Shown: piece by piece, positions 6,746-64,000 of the stretch | Numbering within the stretch: the stretch's first letter is position 1 | How the letters are laid out: every line of letters starts with the position of its first letter | From: Ranitomeya imitator | Lineage: Eukaryota | Direction: 5' to 3' | Assembly (NCBI RefSeq): GCF_032444005.1 | Contig: NC_091285.1 | Location: forward strand, 398,226,001 to 398,290,000 | Length of the DNA stretch: 64,000 nucleotides | Program-made: the position numbers and the translations under genes | The notes under the pieces: model-generated | Database searches by the model: none | What the model was told of the DNA's origin: nothing | The model's input: only the letters and a program-made list of their open reading frames with translations

Positions 6746-6790
6746 TTTAGGTTTTAGTTTCTAGTGGATCCAGACAGTCTCTTCTAATCA

Positions 6791-9194
6791 TTTCAAAAAC
6801 CTGACCTGCACATCCAAACATAGACTGAGTGTGAACAGGTGCTGAACCCAGAGTCGCCAACTCGTATATAGTTAAATAAATAGGGCAGCACACTGCAGCG
6901 CCAAAACATGTAAACTTGAAAAAACGAAATTTGAACTGCATTACTGCACTAGAAATATGAAAAATGAGAGCTTTTAACGCACAAAAATGGCCAATTTTAT
7001 GTGTACCTCGTAGCCACGTTAAGGCATCTCTCTTATACGAGGTCCTAAGTTTGACCTACCTCATTGAGAATAAACGTCTCCATCTGAACGGGTACATGTG
7101 AAACCTCTTCTTGGACTCAAATTCTCTCTCTCTGTGGAGGGGTATTGGACCTACTATAATTAAAACACCTGAAGCTAGGAGGCGGGGAGTGCACGATCAG
7201 AAGGCTAGAGAATACATTTCAAAAACCTGACCTGCACATCCAAACATAGACTGAGTGTGAACAGGTGCTGAACCCAGAGTCGCCAACTCGTATATAGTTA
7301 AATAAATAGGGCAGCACACTGCAGCGCCAAAACATGTAAACTTGAAAAAACGAAATTTGAACTGCATTACTGCACTAGAAATATGAAAAATGAGAGCTTT
7401 TAGCGCACAAAAATGGCCAATTTTATGTGTACCTCGTAGCCACGTTAAGGCATCTCTCTTATACGAGGTCCTAAGTTTGACCTACCTCATTGAGAATAAA
7501 CGTCTCCATCTGAACGGGTACATGTGAAACCTCTTCTTGGACTCAAATTCTCTCTCTCTGTGGAGGGGTATTGGACCTACTATAATTAAAACACCTGAAG
7601 CTAGGAGGCGGGGAGTGCACGATCAGAAGGCTAGAGAATACATTTCAAAAACCTGACCTGCACATCCAAACATAGACTGAGTGTGAACAGGTGCTGAACC
7701 CAGAGTCGCCAACTCGTATATAGTTAAATAAATAGGGCAGCACACTGCAGCGCCAAAACATGTAAACTTGAAAAAACGAAATTTGAACTGCATTACTGCA
7801 CTAGAAATATGAAAAATGAGAGCTTTTAGCGCACAAAAATGGCCAATTTTATGTGTACCTCGTAGCCACGTTAAGGCATCTCTCTTATACGAGGTCCTAA
7901 GTTTGACCTACCTCATTGAGAATAAACGTCTCCATCTGAACGGGTACATGTGAAACCTCTTCTTGGACTCAAATTCTCTCTCTCTGTGGAGGGGTATTGG
8001 ACCTACTATAATTAAAACACCTGAAGCTAGGAGGCGGGGAGTGCACGATCAGAAGGCTAGAGAATACATTTCAAAAACCTGACCTGCACATCCAAACATA
8101 GACTGAGTGTGAACAGGTGCTGAACCCAGAGTCGCCAACTCGTATATAGTTAAATAAATAGGGCAGCACACTGCAGCGCCAAAACATGTAAACTTGAAAA
8201 AACGAAATTTGAACTGCATTACTGCACTAGAAATATGAAAAATGAGAGCTTTTAGCGCACAAAAATGGCCAATTTTATGTGTACCTCGTAGCCACGTTAA
8301 GGCATCTCTCTTATACGAGGTCCTAAGTTTGACCTACCTCATTGAGAATAAACGTCTCCATCTGAACGGGTGATGCCTTAACGTGGCTCAGTCTATGTTT
8401 GGATGTGCAGGTCAGGTTTTTGAAATGTATTCTCTAGCCTTCTGATCGTGCACTCCCCGCCTCCTAGCTTCAGGTGTTTTAATTATAGTAGGTCCAATAC
8501 CCCTCCACAGAGAGAGAGAATTTGAGTCCAAGAAGAGGTTTCACATGTACCCGTTCAGATGGAGACGTTTATTCTCAATGAGGTAGGTCAAACTTAGGAC
8601 CTCGTATAAGAGAGATGCCTTAACGTGGCTACGAGGTACACATAAAATTGGCCATTTTTGTGCGCTAAAAGCTCTCATTTTTCATATTTCTAGTGCAGTA
8701 ATGCAGTTCAAATTTCGTTTTTTCAAGTTTACATGTTTTGGCGCTGCAGTGTGCTGCCCTATTTATTTAACTATATACGAGTTGGCGACTCTGGGTTCAG
8801 CACCTGTTCACACTCAGTCTATGTTTGGATGTGCAGGTCAGGTTTTTGAAATGTATTCTCTAGCCTTCTGATCGTGCACTCCCCGCCTCCTAGCTTCAGG
8901 TGTTTTAATTATAGTAGGTCCAATACCCCTCCACAGAGAGAGAGAATTTGAGTCCAAGAAGAGGTTTCACATGTACCCGTTCAGATGGAGACGTTTATTC
9001 TCAATGAGGTAGGTCAAACTTAGGACCTCGTATAAGAGAGATGCCTTAACGTGGCTACGAGGTACACATAAAATTGGCCATTTTTGTGCGCTAAAAGCTC
9101 TCATTTTTCATATTTCTAGTGCAGTAATGCAGTTCAAATTTCGTTTTTTCAAGTTTACATGTTTTGGCGCTGCAGTGTGCTGCCCTATTTATTT
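6791..9194. repeat. 426-bp monomer concatemer: about 3.7 direct copies plus about 1.9 inverted copies, flanked by a 15-bp TSD
   Basis: Units start at 6791, 7217, 7643 and 8069. Inverted copies run 8388-9194 (period 8388 to 8814). AGTCTCTTCTAATCA occurs at 6776-6790 and 9195-9209. Confidence 0.95.
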
Positions 9195-11126: not shown

Positions 11127-14100
11127 CCCCTTCATGACCCAGCCTATTTTGACCTTAAAGACCTTGCCATTTTTTGCAATTCTGACCAGTGTCCCTTTAT
11201 GAGGTAATAACTCAGGAACGCTTCAACGGATCCTAGCGGTTCTGAGATTGTTTTTTCGTGACATATTGGGCTTCATGTTAGTGGTAAATTTAGGTCAATA
11301 AATTCTGCGTTTATTTGTGATAAAAACGGAAATTTGGCGAAAATTTTGAAAATTTTGCAATTTTCACATTTTTAATTTTTATTCTGTTAAACCAGAGAGT
11401 TATGTGACACAAAATAGTTAATAAATAACATTTCCCATATGTATACTTTACATCAGCACAATTTTGGAAACAACATTTGTTTTTGCTAGGAAGTTATAAG
11501 GGTTAAAATTTGACCAGCGATTTCTCATTTTTACAACGAAATTTACAAAACCATTTTTTTTTAGGGACCACCTCACATTTGAAGTCAGTTTGAGGGGTCT
11601 ATATGGCTGAAAATACCCAAAAGTGACACCATTCTAAAAATGCACCCCTCAAGGTGCACAAAACCACATTCAAGAAGTTTATTAACCCTTCAGGTACTTC
11701 ACAGCAGCAGAAGTAACATGGAAGGAAAAAATTAACATTTAACTTTTTAGTCACAAAAATTATCTTTTAGCAACAATTTTTTTATTTTCCCAATGGTAAA
11801 AGGAGAAACTGAACCACGAAAGTTGTTGTCCAATTTGTCCTGAGTACACTGATACCTCATATGTTGGGGTAAACCACTGTTTGGGCGCACGGCAGGGCTT
11901 GGAAGGGAAGGAGCGCCATTTGACTTTTTGAATGAAAAATTGGCTCCACTCTTTAGCGGACACCATGTCACGTTTGGAGAGCCCCTGTGTGCCTAAACAT
12001 TGGAGCTCCCCCACAAGTGACCCCATTTTGGAAACTAGACCCCCCAAGGAACTTATCTAGATGCATATTGAGCACTTTAAACCCCCAGGTGCTTCACAGA
12101 AGTTTATAACGCAAAGCCATGAAAATAAAAAAAAAAAATTATTTTCTCAAAAATGATCTTTTAGCCTGCAATTTTTTATTTTCCCAAGGGTAACAGGAGA
12201 AATTTCACCCCAAAAGTTGTTGTCCAGTTTCTCCCGAGTACGCGGATACCCCATGTGTGGGGGTAAACCACTGTTTGGGCACACGTCGGGGCTCAGAAGG
12301 GAAGTAGTGACTTTTGAAATGCAGACTTTGATGGAATGGTCTGCGGGCGTCACGTTGCGTTTGCAGAGCCCCTGGTGTGCCTAAACAGTAGAAACCGCCC
12401 ACAAGTGACCCCATTTTAGAAACTAGACCCCCCAAGGAACTTATCTAGATATGTGGTGAGCACTTTGAACCCCCAAGTGCTTCACAGACGTTTACAACGC
12501 AGAGCCGTGAAAATAAAAAAATCATTTTTCTTTCCTCAAAAATGATGTTTTAGCAAGCATTTTTTTATTTTCACAAGGGTAACAGGAGAAATTGGACCCC
12601 AGTAATTGTTGCGCAGTTTGTCCTGAGTATGCTGGTACCCCATATGTGGGGTTAAACCACTGTTTGGGCACACGTCGGGGCTCGGAAGTGAGGGAGCACC
12701 ATTTGACATTTTGAATACAAGATTGGCTGGAATCAATGGTGGCGCCATGTTGCGTTTGGAGACCCCTGATGTGCCTAAACAGTGGAAACCCCTCAATTCT
12801 ACCTCCAACACACCCCTAACCCTAATCCCAACTCTAGCCATAACCCTGATCACACCCCTAACCACAACCCTAATTCCAACCCTAACCCTAAGGCTATGTG
12901 CCCACGTTGCGGATTCGTGTGAGATTTTTCAGCATCATTTTTGAAAAATACGCGGGTAAAAGGCACTGCGTTTTACCTGCGGATTTACCATGGATGTCCA
13001 GTGTTTTTTGTGCGGATTTCACCTGTGGATTCCTATTGAGGAACAGGTGTAAAACGCTGCGGAATCCGCACAAAGAATTGACATGCTGCGGAAAATACAA
13101 CGCAGCGTTTCCGCGTGGTATTTTCAGCACCATGGGCACAGCGGATTTGGTTTTCCATAGGTTTACTTGGTACTGTAAACCTGATGGAAAACTGCTACGA
13201 ATCCGCAGCGGCCAATCCGCTGCATATCCGCAGCCAAATCCGCACCGTGTGCACATGGCCTAATTCTAAAGGTATGTGCACACGCTGCGGAAAACGCTGC
13301 GGATCCGCAGCAGTTTCCCATGAGTTTACAGTTCAATGTAAACCTATGGGAAACAAAAATCGCTGTACACATGCTGCAGAAAAACTGCACGGAAACGCAG
13401 CGGTTTACATTCCGCAGCATGTCACTTCTTTGTGCGGATTCCACAGCGGTTTTACAACTGCTCCAGTAGAAAATCGCAGTTGTAAAACCGCAATGAAATG
13501 CGCAGAAAAAACACGGTAAATCCGCCATAAATCCGCAGCGGTTTAGCACTGCGGATTTATGAAATCCGCAGCGGAAAAATCCGCAGAGGACCAGAATACG
13601 TGTGCACATATCGAAACCCTAACCCTAGCCCTAACCCTAGCCCTAACCCTATTCTAACATTAGTGGGAAAAAAAAAATTCTTTATTTTTTTATTGTCCCT
13701 ACCTATGGGGGTGACAAAGGGGGGGGGGGGGGTCATTTATTATTTTTTTTTATTTTGATCACTGTGATATAATCTATCTCAGTGATCAAAATGCACTTTG
13801 AACGAATCTGCCGGCCGGCAGATTCGGCGGGCGCACTGCGTATGCGCCCGCCATTTTGGAAGAGGGCGGCAACCAGGGAGAAGACGGACGGACCCCGGCA
13901 GGATCGGTAAGTATGATGGGGTGCGGGGGGAGGACGGGGGGGGGGGAAATCGGAGCATGGGGGGGTGGATCAGAACGCGGGAGGGGTGGAACGGAGCACC
14001 GGGGGGGTGGAACGGAGCACGGGGGGGGGGGGGGTGGAACGGAGCACGGGGGGTGGAACGGAGCACGGGGGGGGGGGGGTGGATCGGAGTGCAGGGGGGG

Positions 14101-50851: not shown

Positions 50852-53067
50852 TGTAACGCTCGCGCCCAGACTGGTTGGCACGGGCGTGTGGACGCACTGG
50901 ACCACAGACCAGACTTCCCTGGAAGAGGTTTAAATAGGTAGCTTCCTAGGTGTTCGCTGGAGCCTCTGATGGTGAGGTCAGACTTGTGTGGCAGGTAGCT
51001 ACCAGGTACCACTCCAGGGTGGTGTCTGGCTGTGGATGCTCATCCCACCGGGGAACAGGACACAGACAGGCAGTCACAGCTGTGACACTGACTGATGACC
51101 GGATACAGCAGAGGCCCTAACGGGCGGACTGGCTTGACGGAGACTCAAGCAGGCGGGCACGGCTGGCACTCAGGCAGGACAGGAGGACTGAACTGGAACA
51201 CTGGCAGAACCAGTATGGACCGGTATACAGGCAGGCACAGCAAGTACGTAGGAACAGGTAGGGACCTGTTCTGACAGGAGGAACGGAGGAAGGGAAAGAC
51301 CGCAAGAGCGGAAACAAAGCAGGAGCACAGGAGGAGGAGCCAAGGGCAAGAACAGAAACGCAGGAAGCGGAGCCAAGAGCGGGAAGCAGAGTAAAGTACA
51401 AAAATGCAGGAGGCGGAGCCAAGAGCAGGAGGCGAAGCCAAGTGCGTAAACGCAGGAGGCGGAGCCAATAGCAGGAGACATAGAAACGAAGCAAGGTAGA
51501 TCCGCAAGGAGCGGAGCCAGGTAGAACCCCAAGGAGCGGAGCCGCAGAGCAAGGTCACAGAGTGCAGGGCTGAATGTAGAGCAAAGCTAGACCCAGAGTG
51601 CAGAGCAGAGCAGGACACTGAGTGCAGAGCCAAGAGCAGAGCAGGACACAGAATGCAGAGCCAAGAGCAGCAGAGCAAGACACAAAGGGCAGAGCAAGAC
51701 ACAGAGAGCAGAGCCGAGAGGTGCTGAGCCACTGGTAGTGGCAAACAGAGCAGAGAGATAAGGAGAGGTACACACAGCAGAGTGGAAATGGTTAACAAGC
51801 AAGGAGACAACAGGAACGGACATAGACCAGAGTTCAGACAGGAACAGACACAGATACTAGAACTTGACACGGATACAGACCTGCGGAATGCAGGCCTCAT
51901 AGTCAGACACAGACGTAACGGAACACAGATTCAGACCAGGGTACGACGCCCCACTGGGTGGCGAACACAGAGACAGAACCAGACACCTCAGCAGCAAAGT
52001 ACTGACTGAGGAAGTAAGTTTGCTCAGGCGTCCTCCAGTGGGTGAGGACGCCTTAAGAATCAGAGGCCTCTAGACTATTGGCCAGGGACACCTTAGGGAG
52101 GTGCACACAGACTGAATAAGAAACAGGAGCTGCTGGCGCTGCCCCCCTATGCACACAGACAGAAAGTGTACACAGAGCAAGCGGCCATGAAGCACACGGC
52201 ATGAAGCCAGCAGCAGACAAGGAAAATGGTGTGCACTCAGGTCAGGGACAAGGAGGTGCTGGTAAACTGACCGTGAGGTCAAGTCAATCATTCAAAAAAG
52301 ATTACCGCACACTCAAGACTGGTAAGATGCAAAAGGTGTATGCCAATTTTATTGAAGAAAACAAAACAAAAAAGAAGTGGTTGCCACATTCATATTCATT
52401 TGAAATAGACAAAAAACCCGACGTTTCGACCCTCCCGGGTCTTACTCATTTGGTTACTCAAGTCCTTTGACATAGATGCATAATAGTGGCAGTGGTAGGG
52501 GGTGTACGACCGATCCCTTGTTAAGGCACAACCTTATAATAAAGCCAGTCCGGGCAGAAGTGTCCCGGGAGCACAAAATCTGGGTGGTGAGGGCCGTTAG
52601 ACACCTAGTGGGTCTGAAAAGGGTCCCTGGGAGGATTAGCGGCGCATCCCGCGCCTTGCTGCGATGTCCTGGGGGGAGACCCGGAAAGACTTCTGCCCGG
52701 ACTGGCTTTATTATAAGGTTGTGCCTTAACAAGGGATCGGTCGTACACCCCCTACCACTGCCACTATTATGCATCTATGTCAAAGGACTTGAGTAACCCC
52801 ATGAGTAAGACCCGGGAGGGTCGAAACGTCGTTTTTTTGTCTATTTCAAATGAATATGAATGTGGCAACCACTTCTTTTTTGTTTTGTTTTCTTCAATAA
52901 AATTGGCATACACCTTTTGCATCTTACCAGTCTTGAGTGTGCGGTAATCTTTTTTGAATGGAGCCAGCAGCAGACAGATCTCGCAGCATGGCACAGGGTG
53001 AGTGAGTTGATGTATCAAGCAGGTGGGGGATGGAAGGCCATGCAGTGATGCCGGCAGGGTTGTTACA
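50852..53067. mobile_element. Solo LTR (Gypsy-like) with internal minisatellites
   Basis: TGTAAC...GTTACA termini and a 5-bp TSD CATCA (50847-50851, 53068-53072). No pol sequence. Confidence 0.8.
52289..52960. mobile_element. Penelope-like inverted pseudo-LTR hairpin inside the solo LTR
   Basis: ~272-bp inverted arms with a 127-bp spacer. Each arm carries GACCC-ggga-GGGTC-GAAACGTC...AATAAA. Confidence 0.6.
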
Positions 53068-53864: not shown

Positions 53865-54790
53865 AAGATTATTATGATTATTATAAATGTTATTAAGTAC
53901 GTTTTTGTTGAAAACTGTTTTTTTTCACCACTTACTGCATAGCGTATTGCATAGTTACAATTTAAGTTTTGTGTTCTAAAGTTGTATTCCAATATATTTT
54001 ATGTTATACCTAAATAGTTTGATTATTGTATTGTAATGGTGATTAGAAGTCTGATGTTGCCATTTACTAGAGTAAATTTATAACTTAAACATGAGCCATG
54101 TATGAGGGAGTTGGGGGTCAGAGAAACAGAGGAGTAGGAGGTTTGGCTTACTGACTCCACTGCCCTGGTCTTAGGTTTACAGCAAGGTTGATGTGATGTA
54201 TAGAAATTTAATGCCCTCTGAAAACTTGCAGGTAAAAAACATTAGTGATACAGCCATGTGCGGATAACAAGTTTTGTCAAAGCCACCTACCAGGAAGGAT
54301 CCATTTTATATTGACTCCGCAGCAATAAAATGCAAAAAGAGGGGATTAAAACATCAAATATAAATCACTTGACACTGAGAATATTCCCAGGTTATTTGTA
54401 TGATATAATGAGCAATTGTGATAGAAGGGGTGGGGGAGTTTATGAAATTGCGCTTTTTCTCCTCCTAGCTCGCCTACACTTTGATTTTTTTTTTTTTCAC
54501 ACCTTCCATTACATTACATGATAAAATGAATGTGATCATTCAAACGTACAACTTGTGCCACAAAAAATAAGCTCTAATACAACTGTGTTGATGGAAAAAT
54601 AAATGTATGAATCTTGGGAGTGTGTATGTGGGGGGGGGGGGGGGGGGAGGAACAAAAAAAAAAAACACAAAAAAATGTTGCAGAGAAAGGGTTAAAAAAG
54701 AATCAGGCTTTCAGCCTGTGATGAATGCTTCAGGTGTGCGGTTGGTCATGTTCCAGTCTGCTTGGTCCACTGGTCAGAAGTTGTGTTTTT

Positions 54791-57046
54791 CTCCGATATG
54801 ACGCGCTGGTATTCACGCCGGTGAAGAAAGAAGAATCCTGAGCTGCAGCCAACAGCGAAAATGCGAGGAGACCAGGAGCCGCAACGCCCATCAAGGTTCT
54901 GCTACAGCCAGGAAGGGAGAGAAAGCAGCGGAGAGTCCATGGCAGCAGGCAAGTTATATGCGGCTGATTCGGTCCGGTGGGAGAGGAGAGATAAGGCCAG
55001 GGAGGGCCGGGTGATCCCTCCATTGGACACTTATCACACAGCGGAGAGCAAGGGAGTTGGTGTGGCGGCGGTAAGGAGGGGAGAGGACCCGCCGCTGCAG
55101 GAGGATCTGACATGCTGCAAAGCGGAGCTCAGAACACCGCCACCGCTATATAACGCCGCACAGTCTCTCTTTACTTATGAGAGTTGTGCCACCCTTCAAC
55201 CCCATAATAAATGCTCACAAAAGGCAGCGGATTTTGGAGATGTCCCCAACAATAAGGGACAAATATGCATAAAATACGACACAGAAGGTGTAGAGGCTAC
55301 TGCAGTGATAATTAGGAAGGAGAGAGCCTTGTCAATGAGAACTGGCGAAAAGGCGACTAGAGCGCCACTACAGACATCCAGTGCCAAGTAGTCTCAGCCC
55401 TCAATTGAGCCCTGTATCTAACATCTTATTGACAGAGTTGAATCTATTATTAATGAAAGATTTACTGAGTTCTCTATTAAAACTTGTCCGAGTCTTATTA
55501 TGGGCAATCCATCCAGTGAGGTCATTTGCAGTGATACTGTAAGAAATGCGCAGATGATCGACATACATTCAGACTCTGATGCATCTGATTCACAAAGGGG
55601 AGAGGAGAACTTCGATTCAGAAAGTTCTGTTAACACTTCAACATTCTCTGACCTGGCCTCTTCAGAAAACGCGTCTTCACACGATTACGTTGAGCAAGCT
55701 GAAAACTCCAACCACGAACGTTCTTCTCCTTTCCTTTCACAAATAGATGAGATCCCTGCATCAGATGACCATCCCACAGAAGGTTTCATGACCAAGATGC
55801 TTAAACTTCTTTTAATCTCAATGACATACAATAAAGCTAACCACAGAGATATACTGGAGGACCTCAAAATTAAATGGCCCGAGTCCACGCCAATAAATAG
55901 CCCTAAAGCTACAGAAGCCTTCGTTAAAAGGCTCATACAGGACATACTAATGACAGCGGCCAATGACAACCACTCCACTTCATCCAGAACCTCTGACAAA
56001 GCTAAATTCGAACCAAGGATAACAAATTCTACTTACATAAAATGTGAGCCCAACAATCCGCAAACTCTACCTGCACTCTCAGACTCCATAAATAAAATCC
56101 AAAGAGACAATGCCTCCTTCAGATCCAATCTGGATAATTACGAGAATTATAGGAGACAAAACAACATCAAGATTAGAGGAATTCCTGACTCGATCCAAAC
56201 TTTTCAACTTAGGAGCTATGTTTCCTCAATGATTTCTCATTTATTTCCTGATACTGATGAGAGCCGTTTGATTGATAAAGCTTTCAGAATCCACAGACCG
56301 CCTTCTCTCCCGCACGACTTAGCAACCGATGTCATAGTGTCATTCTACCCAAATTGGTTGAGAAATGCGCTCCTTGGCGTGTCAAAGAAGCAAAAATTTC
56401 TTTCATCTCCATGCAATCACCTAACTTTCTTCTAAGACATATCAAAGGAAACTCTACAAAAAAGGAAAGCTTTTTCCCAAATTACACGTCCACTCCTGCA
56501 AGCTGGGATTCCCTATATTTGGACGCGATCTTCAACCCTCCAAGTGAAATATGCTCACAAATCTATCCCTATACTCTCTCTGGAGGAGTGAGTTGTTTTC
56601 CTTAAAGGGGTTGGAATCAAAATTTCAGCGGTCTCCTCCGGACGCTCCTCTACAAAGGACTGGGACCCCTTCCTGATTGAAAGAACTGTACGCTACTCCT
56701 TCATAACTAAAAGAAGTCTTCCACTTTCATAACTCCTTCGAAGAACCAAACTTTCCCTCCATTTAGTTTAGGGTCGCCTTAGGGTGCTTCCAGACATGAC
56801 GGGCCTACATGTACTGCATTTTACTTTACTTGTTTCTCTTACAGGTCTCTAGGTTTACTTTAAAGCTATAATTGGTAACAAATAGCTTGAGTAATCTTCG
56901 AGAACACTTATATGTACATTAATATGCCTGTCTTTTCTTTCCCATTCCCTTTGTCGTAGGGAATTACTTATCCTTTCCTCTTTACCCACTTTCCCTTCCC
57001 CTTTCCCTCCATAAAATATTGTAAAACCAATAAAGTTTGATGAAAA
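54791..57046 (+). mobile_element. L1 ORF1-only (half-L1-like) retroelement
   Basis: ENYRRQNNIKIRGIP, IDKAFRIH and DISKETLQKRK motifs of L1 ORF1p; no ORF2. AATAAA at about 57029 followed by a short A run. TSD AGAAGTTGTGTTTTT at 54776-54790 and 57047-57061. Confidence 0.85.
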
Positions 57047-57345
57047 AGAAGTTGTGTTTTTAATTTTCATTCGTACTCATTTTGATTTAGAAGAACTTTC
57101 TCCCCACAAATCCACCTGCTGGATATTATTAGAAATAGTGCAGGGCACATACAAAATGGGATTTTGCACATTTCTTTTTTGTGCAGTATGTGGGGGCAAT
57201 GATGTATAAATCAGATCCGACTCCACTGCTCTCATACTGGATTAATGACCTCATAAATGTCAAAAGTTTTGTTCTGCATGGACTGAACACTAGTAACTGC
57301 TCTCTGGTTTTTGGTGGGAGATAGTTGAGCTTTCTTTGAAAAAAA

Positions 57346-60300
57346 AAAATAGTAGTTACTTACCGATAACGGTATTTCTCTGATCCCATGATGGCACCAC
57401 GGAGAGAGGGGTCCGCCCCCAGGGACAGGAAACCTACAGGTGAAAAAAGGGCGTACCTCTCTCCCACATCAGTTGGATTACAGAGCCTTATACAGAACTT
57501 CAGCTGCAACTCAATATTTGCACAAATTAAACTTAACCTATTTAACTTAACAGAGGCACCGTGACTAAAATTAATTACTAGTACATTACAAAGTGCACAC
57601 CTGTGTGTGAAAAGGGAGGGAATATACGGGTGCCATCATGGGATCAGAGAAATACCGTTATCGGTAAGTAACTACCATTTTCTCTATCCCCATGATGGCA
57701 CCATGGAGAGATTTGCATAGATAGAACTCTTAGGGAGGGACCACTGCTTCTAGAACCCTTCGCCCAAAGATAAGATCAGAGGAGGTCAAGTCTAAACGGT
57801 AATGTTTGAAAAATGTAGACTGGGAAGACCAAGTGGCCGCTCTACATATCTGTTGTATTGAAGCACCAGCTCTCTCCGCCCAGGATGATGCCACTGCTCT
57901 GGTCGAATGAGCCTTTATATTCTCCGGGATGGCTGTCCCGCAGGATGAGTAGGATAGGGCGATGGCGTCTCTTATCCATCTCGCTAACATGGCTTTCGAT
58001 GCTTTTTGTCCCTTCCGTGGACCCTGGAAGCAGACAAACAGAGCCCTATCCTTTCTGCACTCCCTAGTGGCTGATAGATATTGGACCAGACATCTTTTTA
58101 CGTCTAGGGTATGCAGTGTTTTTCCCCCTCATTTTTAGGGTTGGGACAAAAGGAGGGCAAAGAAATCTCTTGCGTTCTGTGAAATTGTGACGCTATTTTA
58201 GGGAGGTAAGCCGGGTCAGTTTTAAGAATGACTCTGTCCTCGAGTATCTGAGTAAAGGGTGGGCATGCAGATAACGGTTGTATATCGCTGACACGACGAG
58301 CCGAGGTTAGGGCCACTAGGAGTGTGGTTTTTAGAGATAAGATCTTTAATGGAACTTCTGCCAGGGGCTCAAAGGGAGGTTTGGTTAGAGCATTTAATAC
58401 AAGGTTTAGATCCCACGGAGGAGAATTGTGGAGGGGAATAGAGCTGGACCTACTTGAGGCTTTAATAAAATCGCATGACCCACCGATTTCTGGCCAAATC
58501 ATAATTATACAGTGCTCCCAAGGCTGCTACCTGAACCTTTAGAGTGCTTGTAGCCAACCCTCTTTCCAAACCTTTCTGTAGGAACTCAAGGATTTTCTCT
58601 ATTGGGATCTCCCCGGACGGGTCTGCGCCCGACACCGACAAGAATTTTTTCCACACTTTCCCATATATTTTAGTGGTTACGAGTTTTCTACTCTGTAATA
58701 GAGTGGACACTAGATTGGGAGAGAACCCTTTATCCCTTAGAAGCCTCCTTTCAAAAGCCAGGCTGTCATTTGTAGATTCTTTACATTGGGGTGAAATACC
58801 GGGCCCTGGGATAGAAGTTTCGGAGTGTCTAATAGAACCCATGGACTTGATATGGACATTTTTCTTAGCCAAGAAAACCATATTCTGCGGGGCCAGAATG
58901 GCGCTATTACTATCACTGTTGCTTCCTCCTCCCGAATTTTCCTCAACACTAAGGGGATGAGCGATATCGGAGGGAACGCGTAGGCGAGGCGATAGTTCCA
59001 AGGAATTGTTAGGGCGTCTAGAGCTACTGGGCTCCCCCGGGGATCGATTGAGCAGAATGTTCTTACTTTGCGGTTTTGACTGTTCGCGAATAGGTCTATT
59101 TCTGGCAGACCCCAGAGATTGCATCCGTCGTTAGGATTTTCTCCGCCGGTAGTGCCCAAGGGACCCCCTTGGTTAAATTCCCTGGGTCTGCCCACCATAC
59201 TAGGGAGTGTATCGTGTTTGATGAGATACTTAATTGCCCGTCTAAATTTCCGTGCAGAGATATGCCTGAATCTAAAGTCTCCCATTGTAGGTCCCGGGAA
59301 TGACATTGTGCCCACTGCACGGCAGGGATACAGGCAGTCATAGAGCCCAGCAGGGACATTGCTTTCCTCAGCGTAGTGACTGGGGATATCGTCAACTGTA
59401 ACACTGCCTGTGTCATTTTTTTAATCTTCCCCTGAGGAAGGTAACACTTCTGCGTGATCGAGTCTAGGACTATCCCTAAGTACTCCTGTACCTGGGATGG
59501 CACTATTTTGGATTTGGGTATGTTTAGCAGCCACCCTAGACTCGACAGTGAAGCATTAACCAGATCCAACTGATGTTTGCAATGTTGGAATGAGGTCCCT
59601 ACCACGAGGAGGTCGTCCAGATAGGGAACTATTAGAACATTCTGTTCCCGTATGTGGGCCATCACTTCTGACATTATTTTTGTGAATACCCGAGGAGCGA
59701 CGGCTATCCCGAAGGGGAGAGCTCGGAATTGGTACTGTTTTACTTCCCACTGGATATTCACTGTCAGTCTGAGATATTTTTGATGATCTCTGTGGATGGG
59801 CACATGGTAATATGCGTCTCGTAAGTCTAAAACAGTCATGAAACACAAGGGAAAGAGTATTTTCACGCAAGATTTTATGGTCTCCATTTTGAAGTGTTGA
59901 ATCTCTAGGAAACTGTTTAATCTTTTGAGATTTATGATCGCTCTGTACGATCCGTCCGGTTTCCTGCGGAGGAAGAGGGGAGCATAGAAGCCCGTGCCTC
60001 TTTCCCGGTATGGGACTTCTTGTAATACCCCTTTCTGGACTAAGTTCAGAATTTCCTCCTGGAGAGCGGACTGTTCGTGTGACTGTTTCTGAGGCGTTAT
60101 CATGAAGGAGTTGCCGGGAGGGATACGAAATTTGAGTCTGAGACCTTCTCGTATTATACCTAAAATCCAGGGACTGTTTAAAATTTTTTCCCATTTTTTT
60201 ATTATCCGGAAGGGGGGGGTGGGGGGGAGGGGGGGGGAAGGGTTGGTGAACAAGAAGCCTCTGTTTATGTTCCTTCTGTCTTCCCATCCGTCTTTATTCC

Positions 60301-62846
60301 CTTTTGGGGGTCTTCTCCGCATGAATTTTCTGTTCCGAAAGGAACGCCTATAAGACTGGTTGGGAAACCCGGGGAAAGATTTCTTCTTATCCCCCGCTTT
60401 GTCAAGGATGTTGTCCAATGTTGACCCAAACAGAAATTCACCTTCGCAAGGTATTGAGCATAATTTGGTCTTCGTTTGCAAGTCCCTCGGCCAGCACTTT
60501 AGCCACAGGGCACGTCTTGCGGCGTTTGAGAAGGAGGCCGACCTGGCTGCTAATCTCGCCGAATCCACCGATGCGTCTGCCAAGAAGGCTGCCGCCCCTT
60601 TCATCATGGACACTGACTTTTGGATTGTCTCTCTTGAGACTTTTTCCTTTAATTGGGAATCCAAGTGCTCGAGCTATACCATTAAGGCGCGGGCCGTACA
60701 AGTGGCTGCGATGGCTGGTTTTAGACCACCTCCTGCTGATTCCCAGGAGTTTTTTAAGAAAAAGTGTCAGCTTTTTTGTCCATCGGGTCCTTTAAGCCCC
60801 CGTCACACACAGCGAGATCGCTAGCGAGATCGCTGCTGAGTCACAAGTTTTGTGACGCAACAGCGATCTCAGTAGCGATCTCGCTATGTGTGACACGTAG
60901 CAGCGATCAGGCCCCTGCTGTGAGATCGCTGGTCGTGTCGGAATGGCCTGGGCCATTTTTTGATCATTGAGGTCCCGCTGGGTAGCACACATCGCTGTGT
61001 TTGACACCTTACCAACGACCTCTCTGACAGGACGTCCCATTGAATCGTCATGAAATAGCATCGTTGTACAGGTCGCTTGGCATCTCACCAGCGACCACAT
61101 AGCGACGCTTGAGCGATCCCTGACAGGTCATATCGTTGTCGGAATCGCTCAAGCGTCGCTATGTGTGACGGGGCCTTTAGGGTACCCATGTCCTCGAAGG
61201 GCAGGGCAAATTTTTTAGAGGCCTTTGCTATGGCCACATCCAATTTTGGTGCTTTGCTCCAGGATGAGAAAGCTGGGTCATCAAACGGGTATTTTCTCTT
61301 AGGAGTCAAGAGAACTTTTTTGTCTGGTTTTTTCCATTCTTTTTTGATCAAAGAGTGAATTTTTTCATTTATCGGGAATACTCTTCTTTTCTTTTGTTCC
61401 AATCCACTGAACATTATATCCTGTGCCGTTCTCTTAGGACGTTCATCTACCAGGCCCATGGTTGTTCTGATGGCCTTTATCAGTGCTTCTGTCTCTTCGA
61501 TAGGGAAACAACTGCGTCCCCCCTCTGAGGATAGTGAAGAGGTGTCGGATGCTGAAGAGTCACTAGAATCAGACGTTTCACTCTCTGACTCATCTATACT
61601 AGATTCGGGAGACTTGTGGATTGATCTGCGTTTTTTCTTTGAAGTTTTAATGCCTTTGAGGGCACTTTCCACCTGACTTTTAATTAATGATTTTAGGTCT
61701 GAGGCGAACGTCGGAGATTCCTCCTGAATGGTTTTCTCTATGCAAGACCCGCATAGCTTTTTCTCCCAGAAGGAAGGTAGCTCTTCTAGACATATAGCAC
61801 ACACTTTGTGCTTTGATTTGCCTGTACATTTGCCTGTAACCACGTATTACATTAGTACTTTCACGTCGATCACTCACCCCTTGTGAATAAGAGATACCGT
61901 CTCTGGCCTCGGGACTATATCCACTGGATTCGTCACCGGTCGCATAGTTTTTTCAGAGACCCGGCTGCGTTGTGACCCTGAGCGTCCACTGCTGCTGCGC
62001 TGCTGAGAGGAAGCGTTTCCCTTGTGCTGATGCTGTGAGCGCTGGTGCCGCTGTACCTGCACTTGCTCAGGAGACAATTGTACACACTCCTGTGCATCTT
62101 GCTGCTCTTTGTCACTCATAGTGGCCTCCACACTGCGTTTTAGCAAAGAGGAGGTTTAATCCACATATCCCCCTTGGAAATGCTCCTTTTTAAATTTGCC
62201 GCCGTCGGAAGTGGCGATCTGCGCATGCGCGCGCGCTACTTCCGGTCCAGAGCACGGGCGCCCCATAGGGAAGATATAATCGGGGACGCCCGCGCGCTCT
62301 AGCGTTCCGCCCCTGTCCTGCCGCCCCGTACTTCCGGTTTAGGCGGCCGGCGTCTAGCGGTGCCATGTGCGCTTTAGTGCGCTCCTGCGTCCCCTCATGG
62401 TAGCGTAGCCGCCGCTACCTCCATGTACCGTTTAGCGGTACAGAGGCTATATCGGTGACCGCCATCACCTGCCTCCTTCCTCCTTTTTTTTTTTTTTTCT
62501 TTGGGGAAGGCAGGCTCGATCCTCTTCACTGCCTCCCCCCACCACAATCACCCATAGGGCCCGCCGACCCCAGCGGTGGTGCTTCAGGGCCGGAGAAAAA
62601 AAGGGGGGGGGGGGGGGGAAGAAAAACCTGCTGGATCCAGCCGTGACAGGGCGCCCCCTGTCAGGAACCGTCCGGACCAGCTCCCTGGAATCCCACAACG
62701 AATCCTCAGGTACGTGCTGTAGGTTCCCCGTCAGGGACAGGAAACCAACTGATGTGGGACAGAGGTACGCCCTTTTTTCACCTGTAGGTTTCCTTTCCCT
62801 GGGGGCGGACCCCTCTCTCCGTGGAGCCATCATGGGGATAGAGAAA
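57346..62846 (-). mobile_element. Second DIRS1-type element (DIRS-B), full length but frameshifted
   Basis: Starts TTTCTCTATCCCCATGATGG, has ITRs and an ICR at about 57625-57710. RT (YLDD) and recombinase (AHSTRA, FFKHY) are broken into several ORFs. Different family from DIRS-A. Confidence 0.92.
60795..61176. mobile_element. Harbinger-type MITE inserted in DIRS-B gag
   Basis: TTA TSD. Removing it restores GTL|KDPMDKK. Confidence 0.85.
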
Positions 62847-64000
62847 TATTGCCAATCATACATTTATAGGATAACTGTCCTGCAGGGACTTGTTACAAGA
62901 AATGGACTTGGATGACTGACAAGTCCTCCAGTGTATTATTGATTGTTTTAAAACAAAGAAAAAAAACGTAAGCAGCTTCTCCGCATACGCACTCGGATGC
63001 ATGCTACATATTCCCCAAGTGCTGTGGGTGACCCCAGTTTTAGTACTTTATCTCCAGTTCTATAATACCCCACCAGGTCTCCATTTGAGGATATCACAAA
63101 GAACATATGTCAATTGACGACCTAGCAAAAGGCTACATTCCCCAACTGCAACAAGGACATTCTGCAGAGATATCCACATTTACCGCTGCGGCTACAAATC
63201 TGACGGAGGACTCTAATAACTCGCCCTTTGCATTGTGCCGGGTGAAATTTCCACCTACATCTGCAATATAAATAGACTTGCTGATGATCTCAAACTCGCA
63301 GCTCCCATCAGTTTACACTGTGGATATGTTTTTCAGTATGTGCATAAAATGTTATAATCTCACGCACTATGCTGGACTGTAATATTTATGAAATAATTCA
63401 CAAGGTTTTCGTACCATTGGACTTTTCCTAATATCCCTTGTGCAGCGGACCAGTGGTTGTAGAGGGAACTAAAGCTGAAAAACACTGGTTCACATTCATT
63501 AAAGTGGCCGCACCAAACGTCTGGTGTTACAAGGATCCCGTGACAGATCGTGCCGTCTGGTTTCACGAACTCCTGCACTGGTTAGAAGTCTGTCACCATC
63601 TTATTAAACAGTGCAGGTTTTTGCTCCTTGCCAGCATTGCAAGGGTTTATCTTCTCAGTTGAAGCTCCTGGAGCTTTCGTACCTGGATTGTCTCAACTCT
63701 TCAGTGTTTGCCACTTCCCTCTGCTGTATAGGCTCACCTATGGCGCTTAAGAACTGCCAGTGTTAGTTCTTACTGCCTGTTTGGAGTTGGAGGTGTAGAC
63801 GGTGGTTGGAGTTTGGAGATTAGTTCAGAAGATTGTTGCTTGGAGTTTTATTTGTGTGCACATCCTCATCCTTTCCTGTTTGGTTTTTCCTTCAACTCCC
63901 ATTTTCCACTATGTTTGGCGAGTGCATTTTGCATGATTGTTATTTTCATCTATCTCTGTCCGTTTTCTATTGTTGGTCCGGTTAGTGTTATCCTATGCAC

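What the first reader, a model, noticed from the sequence alone, without database searches (positions are those of the whole stretch)
54776..57061. L1 ORF1-only retroelement with a 15-bp TSD: a half-L1-like family in a frog?
Seen: a 2256-bp unit with a GC-rich 5' end, an L1-ORF1-type frame, a ~300-bp 3' UTR, AATAAA, a short A run and an exact 15-bp TSD. There is no trace of ORF2. Known: ordinary L1 copies are 5'-truncated and keep ORF2, and ORF1-only HAL1 elements are described from mammals. Inference: this was retrotransposed from a polyadenylated ORF1-only transcript. It could be an independent HAL1-like non-autonomous family or a retrocopy of a domesticated ORF1 gene analogous to L1TD1. I cannot search whether this has been reported in amphibians.
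Basis: partly seen in the sequence, partly recalled or inferred. Interest (0 to 1): 0.75.

Follow-up and report, generated by a model that had tools for sequence, protein, structure and literature searches.

The report
Dead ORF1-only L1-type retroposon copy
This is a dead copy of a small poison-frog family of jumping elements that keep only the RNA-binding gene (ORF1) of an L1 element and must borrow the copying enzyme from a complete L1; such "half-L1" elements are described from mammals, so it is a modest extension, not a new kind of thing.

Summary
A 2,256-bp unit (54791-57046) lies between two exact copies of a 15-bp repeat. It has a CpG-rich 5' end, one L1 ORF1-type frame, no ORF2, a 455-nt 3' UTR (not ~300), AATAAA and a run of five A.

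An in-frame TAA (56433) splits 311 codons from 51 further codons that hold the C-terminal domain.

Pfam and direct searches miss the protein. An exhaustive HMMER search, a profile against solved structures (human L1 ORF1p, E 5.6e-29) and a confident fold all show it is L1 ORF1p.

Its nearest relatives are three Ranitomeya imitator gene models. With the 625-aa one it forms a long-stemmed clade outside ordinary frog L1 ORF1s.

Contigs of a DNA run of the same species hold a few further copies, about 8% different, over the 5' UTR, ORF and 3' UTR. A second species holds a contig whose likeness starts exactly at the unit's 5' end.

Best reading (0.55): a dead member of a low-copy HAL1-like family moved in trans by L1 ORF2p. 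A retrocopy of a domesticated ORF1 gene (0.25) is not excluded.

The scan had already noted other ORF1-only L1-like units elsewhere in this genome (s1-288149, s1-288205, s1-295062).

The parts
54776..54790 (.). 5' copy of the 15-bp target-site duplication (AGAAGTTGTGTTTTT)
54791..55499 (+). 5' untranslated stretch of 709 nt. The first 410 nt are CpG-island-like (GC 57.6%, CpG o/e 0.72). Codons 54861-55388 are open in the ORF1 frame, followed by stops at 55389 and 55419.
   Evidence: In one search the likeness of an organism-B contig starts at 54791.
55500..56432 (+). ORF1, first piece of 311 codons: acidic, Ser-rich N-terminus; helices at residues 94-162; stalk helix 189-220 (56064-56159); RRM 221-300 (56160-56399); first strand of the C-terminal domain.
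56433..56435 (+). In-frame TAA that breaks ORF1. It is private to this copy among the contigs seen: three other contigs carry a sense codon at this place.
56436..56588 (+). ORF1, second piece of 51 codons: C-terminal domain, collinear with P0001 residues 555-605.
56589..56591 (+). TGA that ends the ORF1 frame
56592..57046 (+). 3' UTR of 455 nt with no coding match. It holds a C/T-rich tract at about 56925-57010, AATAAA at 57030-57035 and a run of five A at 57043-57047.
   Evidence: PMC5381506
57047..57061 (.). 3' copy of the 15-bp target-site duplication

Best explanation
The unit is a dead copy of a low-copy, non-autonomous, ORF1-only derivative of an L1 retrotransposon (HAL1-like).

Inferred mechanism. 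RNA polymerase II transcribes a master copy from its CpG-rich 5' end and polyadenylates the RNA after the terminal AATAAA. [quoted passage not shown] This protein presumably coats its own RNA.

The reverse transcriptase and endonuclease must come in trans from an autonomous L1. That enzyme nicks the target and primes on the A tail. Target-primed reverse transcription then gives a full-length insert flanked by a 15-bp duplication.

Shown here: the TSD, the tail signals, the ORF1p homology and fold, the absence of ORF2, and the existence of a few diverged copies. Inferred: promoter activity, binding of the protein to its own RNA, and use of L1 ORF2p.

This copy cannot make the full protein, because a stop cuts off the C-terminal domain.
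For: The TSD is exact and unlikely by chance. AATAAA and an A run sit directly before its 3' copy.

ORF1p identity. phmmer gives 157 hits, best E 7e-26. A profile of 50 hits matches human L1 ORF1p 2ykp at E 5.6e-29, 2ldy (RRM-CTD of L1 ORF1p) at 3.4e-24 and L1TD1 at 2.5e-5. Fifteen of the 50 members hit Pfam Transposase_22. The AlphaFold model has pLDDT mostly above 90 over residues 200-311 and about 88 over 190-199, and the ten best Foldseek hits are all L1 ORF1p. The 51 codons after the stop align with the C-terminal domain.

No ORF2. 455 nt follow ORF1, with no RT or endonuclease match, and the window holds no other likeness to the unit.

The 3' end has a C/T-rich tract plus AATAAA, as described for Xenopus L1 3' UTRs (PMC5381506).

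Other copies. In run X1 the unique flank lies at depth about 11, while element bins sum to 17-133 with a median near 27. Paired contigs differ from the window by 0-1 letters versus 17-22 letters per 235-322 nt, in the 5' UTR, near the ORF start and across the ORF/3' UTR border.

In organism B one contig's likeness starts exactly at 54791 and runs on into an unlike flank, and another 205-nt contig is identical.

Differences to other copies in the ORF are 10 synonymous and 16 non-synonymous, pN/pS about 0.45.

Other ORF1-only L1-like units are noted in the same genome, one followed up as multi-copy.

Pol II transcripts need ORF1p as well as ORF2p to be retroposed (PMC2666806). This gives a reason for such an element to keep ORF1.
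Against: The copy number is very low: about 2-3 copies at 85% likeness or more over most of the length. It rests on summed contig depths, which the tool warns are not copy numbers.

I saw no second copy with both ends and its own TSD, and no autonomous L1 partner that shares its parts.

The A tail has only five A.

The 5' UTR (709 nt) is much longer than in Xenopus L1 families (113-267 nt, PMC5381506).

Six of twelve near-invariant family residues are replaced in this ORF.

The nearest relatives are RefSeq or GenBank gene models rather than annotated repeats.
Confidence: 0.55

Rival explanations
1. It is a processed retrocopy of a host gene that was itself domesticated from L1 ORF1, an L1TD1-like case. 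The parent mRNA was retroposed a few times by L1 ORF2p. This copy is a retropseudogene.
For: The copy number is low. The three best relatives are Ranitomeya imitator gene models; one has two transcript accessions for the same protein. The ORF sits with P0001 on a long stem outside ordinary frog L1 ORF1s. It has lost half of the family's near-invariant residues. It shares an N-terminal module with P0001 and P0002 that ordinary ORF1s lack. pN/pS is about 0.45.
Against: The copies are 7-10% apart with no near-identical parent seen in X1. The unit has an L1-type 3' UTR and a long CpG-rich 5' end, as expected of an element with its own internal promoter. Gene models on repeats are common, and P0002 and P0003 are clearly chimeric. 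The scan's follow-up of a related unit called it multi-copy (not tested here).
Confidence: 0.25
2. It is a one-off product of an ordinary full-length L1. Either the transcript was polyadenylated early in the long ORF1-ORF2 spacer, or ORF2 was lost by an internal deletion during or after this single insertion. In this reading there is no ORF1-only family.
For: Frog L1s have spacers of 257-1,032 nt between the ORFs (PMC5381506), so 455 nt after ORF1 could be spacer. The A tail is short. Part of the ORF (56226-56546) has more look-alike contigs than the rest, as if shared with other L1s.
Against: Diverged contigs also cover the 3' UTR, for example 56453-56730 with 17 differences and a variant at 56998. 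The end has the C/T-rich tract plus AATAAA of true frog L1 3' UTRs. The ORF is far from ordinary frog ORF1s. No protein above about 45% identity exists among 1.84 billion representatives.
Confidence: 0.1

Closest known systems
HAL1 (half-L1) elements of mammals
   Same: They are non-autonomous L1 derivatives that encode only ORF1p (PMC5753468). They have L1-type ends and a TSD and presumably depend on L1 ORF2p.
   Different: They are described from mammals and arose there several times. Here the host is a frog, the family is tiny, and the ORF1 is a deep, aberrant branch with a long acidic N-terminal part. The parent L1 is unknown. The founding HAL1 paper (Bao and Jurka 2010) is not held in the library, and I could not consult Repbase or Dfam.
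L1TD1, a domesticated L1 ORF1 gene of placental mammals
   Same: It is a protein built of L1 ORF1p domains without ORF2. The profile of this family matches its C-terminal domain at E 2.5e-5.
   Different: L1TD1 is a single syntenic gene with two ORF1-like halves and an intron (PMC4161310). This unit is an intronless insert with a TSD and a broken frame.
Autonomous L1 families of Xenopus tropicalis
   Same: [quoted passage not shown] The 3' UTR has a pyrimidine tract, AATAAA and an A tail (PMC5381506).
   Different: Those are about 5.7 kb with ORF2, a 5' UTR of 113-267 nt and conserved 5' motifs. This unit is 2.26 kb without ORF2, with 709 nt before the ATG.
The scan's 'frog half-L1 with giant ORF1' (s1-288149), same genome
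   Same: It is an ORF1-only L1-type unit with a TSD. The closest relative of the window ORF, P0001 (625 aa), also has a long N-terminal extension and a PAM2-like LNYNAPVFIP motif.
   Different: It is a different family. P0001 is only 44-45% identical in the RRM and C-terminal domain, and I found no such motif in the window ORF. I could not read that other element's sequence.
HeT-A of Drosophila (from my own knowledge, not tested here)
   Same: It is a non-LTR retroelement that encodes only the Gag/ORF1-type protein and relies on another element's reverse transcriptase.
   Different: It belongs to a different clade (Jockey), is targeted to telomeres and has a host function. None of this applies here.

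Membership tests
L1 ORF1p (Pfam Transposase_22 / Tnp_22_dsRBD type) | RRM domain homologous to L1 ORF1p | tested here: met
   Pfam does not match the protein directly. A profile that includes it matches 2ykp at E 5.6e-29 and 2w7a at 3e-12. The fold matches 2w7a with TM 0.70. pLDDT is above 90 over most of the domain.
L1 ORF1p (Pfam Transposase_22 / Tnp_22_dsRBD type) | C-terminal domain after the RRM | tested here: met
   The domain is present but cut off by the TAA at 56433. The 51 codons behind the stop align with P0001 residues 555-605 (E 4e-11) and with 26 of the hits.
L1 ORF1p (Pfam Transposase_22 / Tnp_22_dsRBD type) | Coiled coil before the RRM that makes trimers | tested here: inconclusive
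   One confident helix at residues 189-220 has heptad-like spacing. There is no RhxxhE motif. Oligomer state was not tested.
L1 ORF1p (Pfam Transposase_22 / Tnp_22_dsRBD type) | Family-invariant residues kept | tested here: not met
   Six of 12 near-invariant positions are replaced: Y217, D230, K260, F262, A275, T276.
HAL1-type non-autonomous L1 derivative | ORF1 present and ORF2 absent between L1-type ends | tested here: met
HAL1-type non-autonomous L1 derivative | TSD, polyadenylation signal and A tail, the marks of L1-type insertion | tested here: met
   15-bp TSD, AATAAA, and a tail of only five A
HAL1-type non-autonomous L1 derivative | Repeated family whose copies share both ends and have different TSDs | tested here: inconclusive
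   A few diverged contigs cover all parts of the unit. One contig in another species ends its likeness at 54791.
HAL1-type non-autonomous L1 derivative | Descent from, and dependence on, an autonomous L1 of the same genome | not testable with these tools
   The window holds no L1 with ORF2, and the tools offer no search of this genome.
Domesticated ORF1 gene (L1TD1-like) | Intact frame, syntenic orthologues and expression | tested here: inconclusive
   This copy is broken. Two runs that are only guessed to be RNA hold 181-252 nt pieces. Synteny is not testable here.

The most novel reading that the evidence does not exclude
The window ORF and the Ranitomeya imitator proteins P0001, P0002 and P0003 mark a poison-frog lineage of ORF1-type genes that has lived without ORF2 for a long time. 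It has split into families only about 45% identical, with their own N-terminal modules. In this reading it is either a self-maintaining clade of ORF1-only parasites of L1, unlike the short-lived, repeatedly re-born HAL1s of mammals, or a domesticated ORF1 gene family outside mammals that still sheds retrocopies.
Probability: 0.25. Interest if true: 0.6.

Novelty: new member of a known kind. Interest (0 to 1): 0.4.

Why it matters
In the papers I could search, half-L1 elements are described only from mammals. A frog case, together with the others this scan noted in the same genome, would show that losing ORF2 while keeping ORF1 is a recurrent way for L1 derivatives to persist. It would also give a non-mammalian system for asking why a Pol II-made parasite of L1 keeps its own ORF1p.

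The odd, long-stemmed ORF1 lineage shared with Ranitomeya imitator could also be an ORF1 domestication outside mammals. Either way, this particular copy is dead and the family is small, so the finding is of moderate interest.

Tried and rejected
- Pfam scans of the ORF pieces gave no L1 family. The only hits were sub-threshold ApeA_NTD1, CBF and CHDNT, taken as chance.
- phmmer against PDB sequences gave nothing meaningful.
- The word-index protein search was blank twice, for the whole ORF and for residues 185-311. It covers only proteins of 171-544 aa.
- The single-sequence AlphaFold model was useless, with pLDDT 38.
- The ESM Atlas search on residues 60-190 gave chance-level scores.
- Rfam found nothing in 54300-57500.
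- Bao and Jurka 2010 is not held in the library.
- The in-frame upstream stretch shows no likeness to any hit.
- The 46 codons after the TGA show only a non-significant likeness to P0001 and P0142.
- The 5' UTR holds no tandem monomers.
- The conserved Xenopus L1 5' motifs were compared by eye only. A GACGCG lies about 10 nt from the start, but the order of motifs does not fit.
- The careful tree search did not finish, so the quick tree is reported.
- No contig joins 54790 to 57062, so no empty site was seen.

Full report
**What is there**

One search shows the 15-mer AGAAGTTGTGTTTTT at 54776-54790 and again at 57047-57061. The neighbouring bases differ on both sides, so the repeat is exactly 15 bp. 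It is the longest direct repeat in 54700-57100. Only 6 of 2,000 composition-preserving shuffles of that stretch hold any direct repeat of 15 nt or more. Among 26 'AATAAA then A-run' sites on the + strand of the window, this is the only one outside a tandem array whose following word recurs upstream; one further row at the window's first bases is the word overlapping itself.

The 3' copy starts directly after AATAAA (57030-57035), seven bases and a run of five A. The TSD begins with purines (AGAAG). That is compatible with a T-rich bottom-strand nick of the L1 endonuclease type. This is my reading, not a test.

**Layout of the unit**

- **5' stretch, 54791-55499 (709 nt).** The first 410 nt have 57.6% GC and CpG observed/expected 0.72.
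- **ORF1, from the ATG at 55500.** The ATG has A at -3 and G at +4. The frame runs 311 codons to a TAA at 56433. It then continues for 51 codons to a TGA at 56589.
- **3' UTR, 455 nt** (not about 300). Its last 120 nt are a C/T-rich tract, up to 74% pyrimidine per 50 nt, before AATAAA.

Boissinot and Sookdeo (PMC5381506) describe exactly this for Xenopus L1 3' UTRs: a pyrimidine tract, then AATAAA and an A tail. The open pieces of the 3' UTR and the antisense ORFs give no reverse transcriptase or endonuclease match. The window holds no other copy of the unit or of its ORF.

**Is the frame L1 ORF1?**

Direct tests failed. These were Pfam, PDB sequences, two word-index searches and a single-sequence fold.

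The exhaustive HMMER search of 1.84 billion representatives gave 157 hits at E of 1e-3 or better. Most cover residues 190-311. I aligned 49 of them with the window ORF (A1).

- The A1 profile matches the human L1 ORF1p trimer 2ykp at E 5.6e-29, 2ldy (RRM-CTD of L1 ORF1p) at 3.4e-24, the RRM alone (2w7a) at 3e-12, the C-terminal domain (2jrb) at 3.4e-11 and L1TD1 at 2.5e-5.
- Fifteen of the 50 members hit Pfam Transposase_22 on their own.
- With A1 as input, AlphaFold gives pLDDT mostly above 90 over residues 200-311 (about 88 over 190-199): a long helix at 189-220 followed by a beta-alpha-beta-beta-alpha RRM.
- The ten best Foldseek matches in the PDB are all L1 ORF1p. The isolated RRM matches at TM 0.70.
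- The 51 codons behind the TAA align without a gap to residues 555-605 of the best hit P0001 (E 4e-11) and match 26 of the hits.

The frame was therefore one ORF1 of at least 363 codons, now cut within its C-terminal domain. At the stop, three other contigs of run X1 carry a sense codon. The stop is thus private to this copy among those seen.

**An unusual ORF1**

The three best hits all come from the poison frog Ranitomeya imitator.

- **P0001** is a 625-aa RefSeq model named 'mucin-3A-like'. It is 44-45% identical over the RRM and C-terminal domain.
- **P0002** is a chimeric model fused to an ion-channel piece.
- **P0003** is chimeric with an LTR-element gag.

The remaining named hits are uncharacterised proteins of other frogs (Hyla sarda, Leptobrachium leishanense, Aquarana catesbeiana).

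In a quick maximum-likelihood tree of the RRM and C-terminal domain region, the window ORF and P0001 form a pair. Support is SH-aLRT 100 on a stem of 1.02 changes per column. The pair lies outside a well-supported clade of 67 ordinary frog ORF1s. The careful search did not finish. P0002 and P0003 were left out because they were too short.

The window ORF has replaced six of the twelve near-invariant residues of the family. It shares with P0001 and P0002 an N-terminal part (residues 33-160) that the ordinary ORF1s lack. That part is acidic and Ser-rich and is followed by helices.

**Copies elsewhere**

One reads call was allowed, and all runs were contigs. Depths are therefore rough, and the tool warns against reading them as copy numbers.

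In DNA run X1 (same species label; possibly the sample that was assembled), the unique right flank lies at depth 11.4. The bins of the unit sum to 17-133, with a median near 27. This suggests about two to three copies at 85% likeness or more over most of the length. There are more over the RRM and C-terminal domain (56226-56546) and one spot of the 3' UTR.

More telling are pairs of contigs over the same stretch:

| Stretch | Differences from the window |
|---|---|
| 55287-55521 | 0 and 19 |
| 56453-56730 | 1, and 17 plus 4 gaps |
| 54809-55130 | 22 plus 9 gaps (single contig) |

Diverged copies, 7-10% away, thus cover the 5' UTR, the ORF start and the ORF/3' UTR border. A variant also exists at 56998, near the tail.

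In a DNA run of another species label (X4), a 205-nt contig is identical to 54801-55005. Another contig matches only 54791-54831 and then runs on for 116 letters unlike the window's flank. Its likeness therefore ends at the very base that the TSD marks as the 5' end. This match is thin: 41 nt with 4 mismatches.

Two runs that are only guessed to be RNA hold perfect or near-perfect pieces of 252 and 181 nt. I count expression as not shown.

Of the 26 listed differences within the ORF, 10 are synonymous and 16 are not. With 239 synonymous and 850 non-synonymous sites, that gives pN/pS of about 0.45. This is a weak sign of constraint in the lineages that made the copies. The sample is biased, because only the best-supported differences are listed.

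**What it most likely is**

The marks of L1-type insertion, an L1-type 3' UTR, a CpG-rich 5' end, an ORF1p gene and no ORF2 fit a HAL1-like non-autonomous element. So do several diverged copies and further ORF1-only L1-like units noted by this scan in the same genome. One of those was followed up as multi-copy; I did not test that.

HAL1 is defined as an L1 derivative that encodes only ORF1p. It is said to have arisen several times in mammals (PMC5753468). A reason to keep ORF1 is that Pol II transcripts need ORF1p as well as ORF2p to be retroposed (PMC2666806).

Several points speak against this reading:

- The family is tiny.
- No full second copy and no partner L1 were seen.
- The A tail is short.
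- The 5' stretch is far longer than in Xenopus L1 (113-267 nt).
- The protein has drifted from the family consensus.
- Its nearest kin are annotated as genes.

I therefore keep a retrocopy of a domesticated ORF1 gene at 0.25 and a one-off truncation or deletion of a normal L1 at 0.10.

**What is known**

Full-text searches for HAL1 or half-L1 with Xenopus, and for L1TD1 with ORF1 and Xenopus, found no report of such elements in amphibians. Two poison-frog genome papers do not mention ORF1 or LINE-1 at all. I could not consult Repbase or Dfam, and Bao and Jurka 2010 is not held. 'Not reported' is therefore weak.

**Limits**

No tool searches this genome as a whole.

I built no consensus and mended no frame. 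For the tree only, the two ORF pieces were joined with X at the stop.

Noticed in passing
window 54792-55499 (open stretch 54861-55388): The stretch before the ORF1 ATG has only 3 stops in the ORF1 frame (54822, 55389, 55419), against 17 and 9 in the other two frames. A 176-codon open stretch lies in the same frame as ORF1. With it, the distance to the point that aligns with P0001 residue 293 would be 279 codons. ORF1 may therefore once have been about 577 codons long, like the 625-aa P0001, behind a 70-nt 5' UTR. My Poisson estimate for 3 or fewer stops is about 0.01. The stretch shows no sequence likeness to any hit.
   Followed up: partly
P0001 residues 237-246 (Ranitomeya imitator XP_069614618): The closest relative carries LNYNAPVFIP, which looks like a PAM2 motif for docking poly(A)-binding protein. 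I found no clear counterpart in the window ORF; PLYNAAQSLF in the upstream in-frame stretch is out of register.
   Followed up: partly
window 56592-56630: Directly after the TGA the frame reads VVFLKGVGIK, which resembles P0001 ISFLKQNGLK and P0142 VAFLQTLGIS at the same place after the C-terminal domain. The TGA may therefore be a second premature stop. The likeness is not significant on its own.
   Followed up: partly
window about 57350-62900, minus strand: A DIRS-type element lies next to the insert. It has ORFs for a reverse transcriptase (59096-60664), a tyrosine-recombinase-like end (57730-57990) and a gag-like protein (61085-61843). Its first bases are extremely repeated in the reads, with depth above 90,000.
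   Followed up: no
window 52454-52796: Two 106-aa ORFs on opposite strands share their first 29 and last 37 residues. The stretch therefore has long inverted-repeat ends, like a MITE or a hairpin.
   Followed up: no
window 54621-54670: A run of more than 20 G is followed by an A-rich run just upstream of the insert. Contigs break there and depth drops to 3.5.
   Followed up: no
window 6789-9112 and 11727-12728: Tandem arrays: perfect 426-bp repeats in at least six copies, and units of about 390 bp at 73-83% identity.
   Followed up: no
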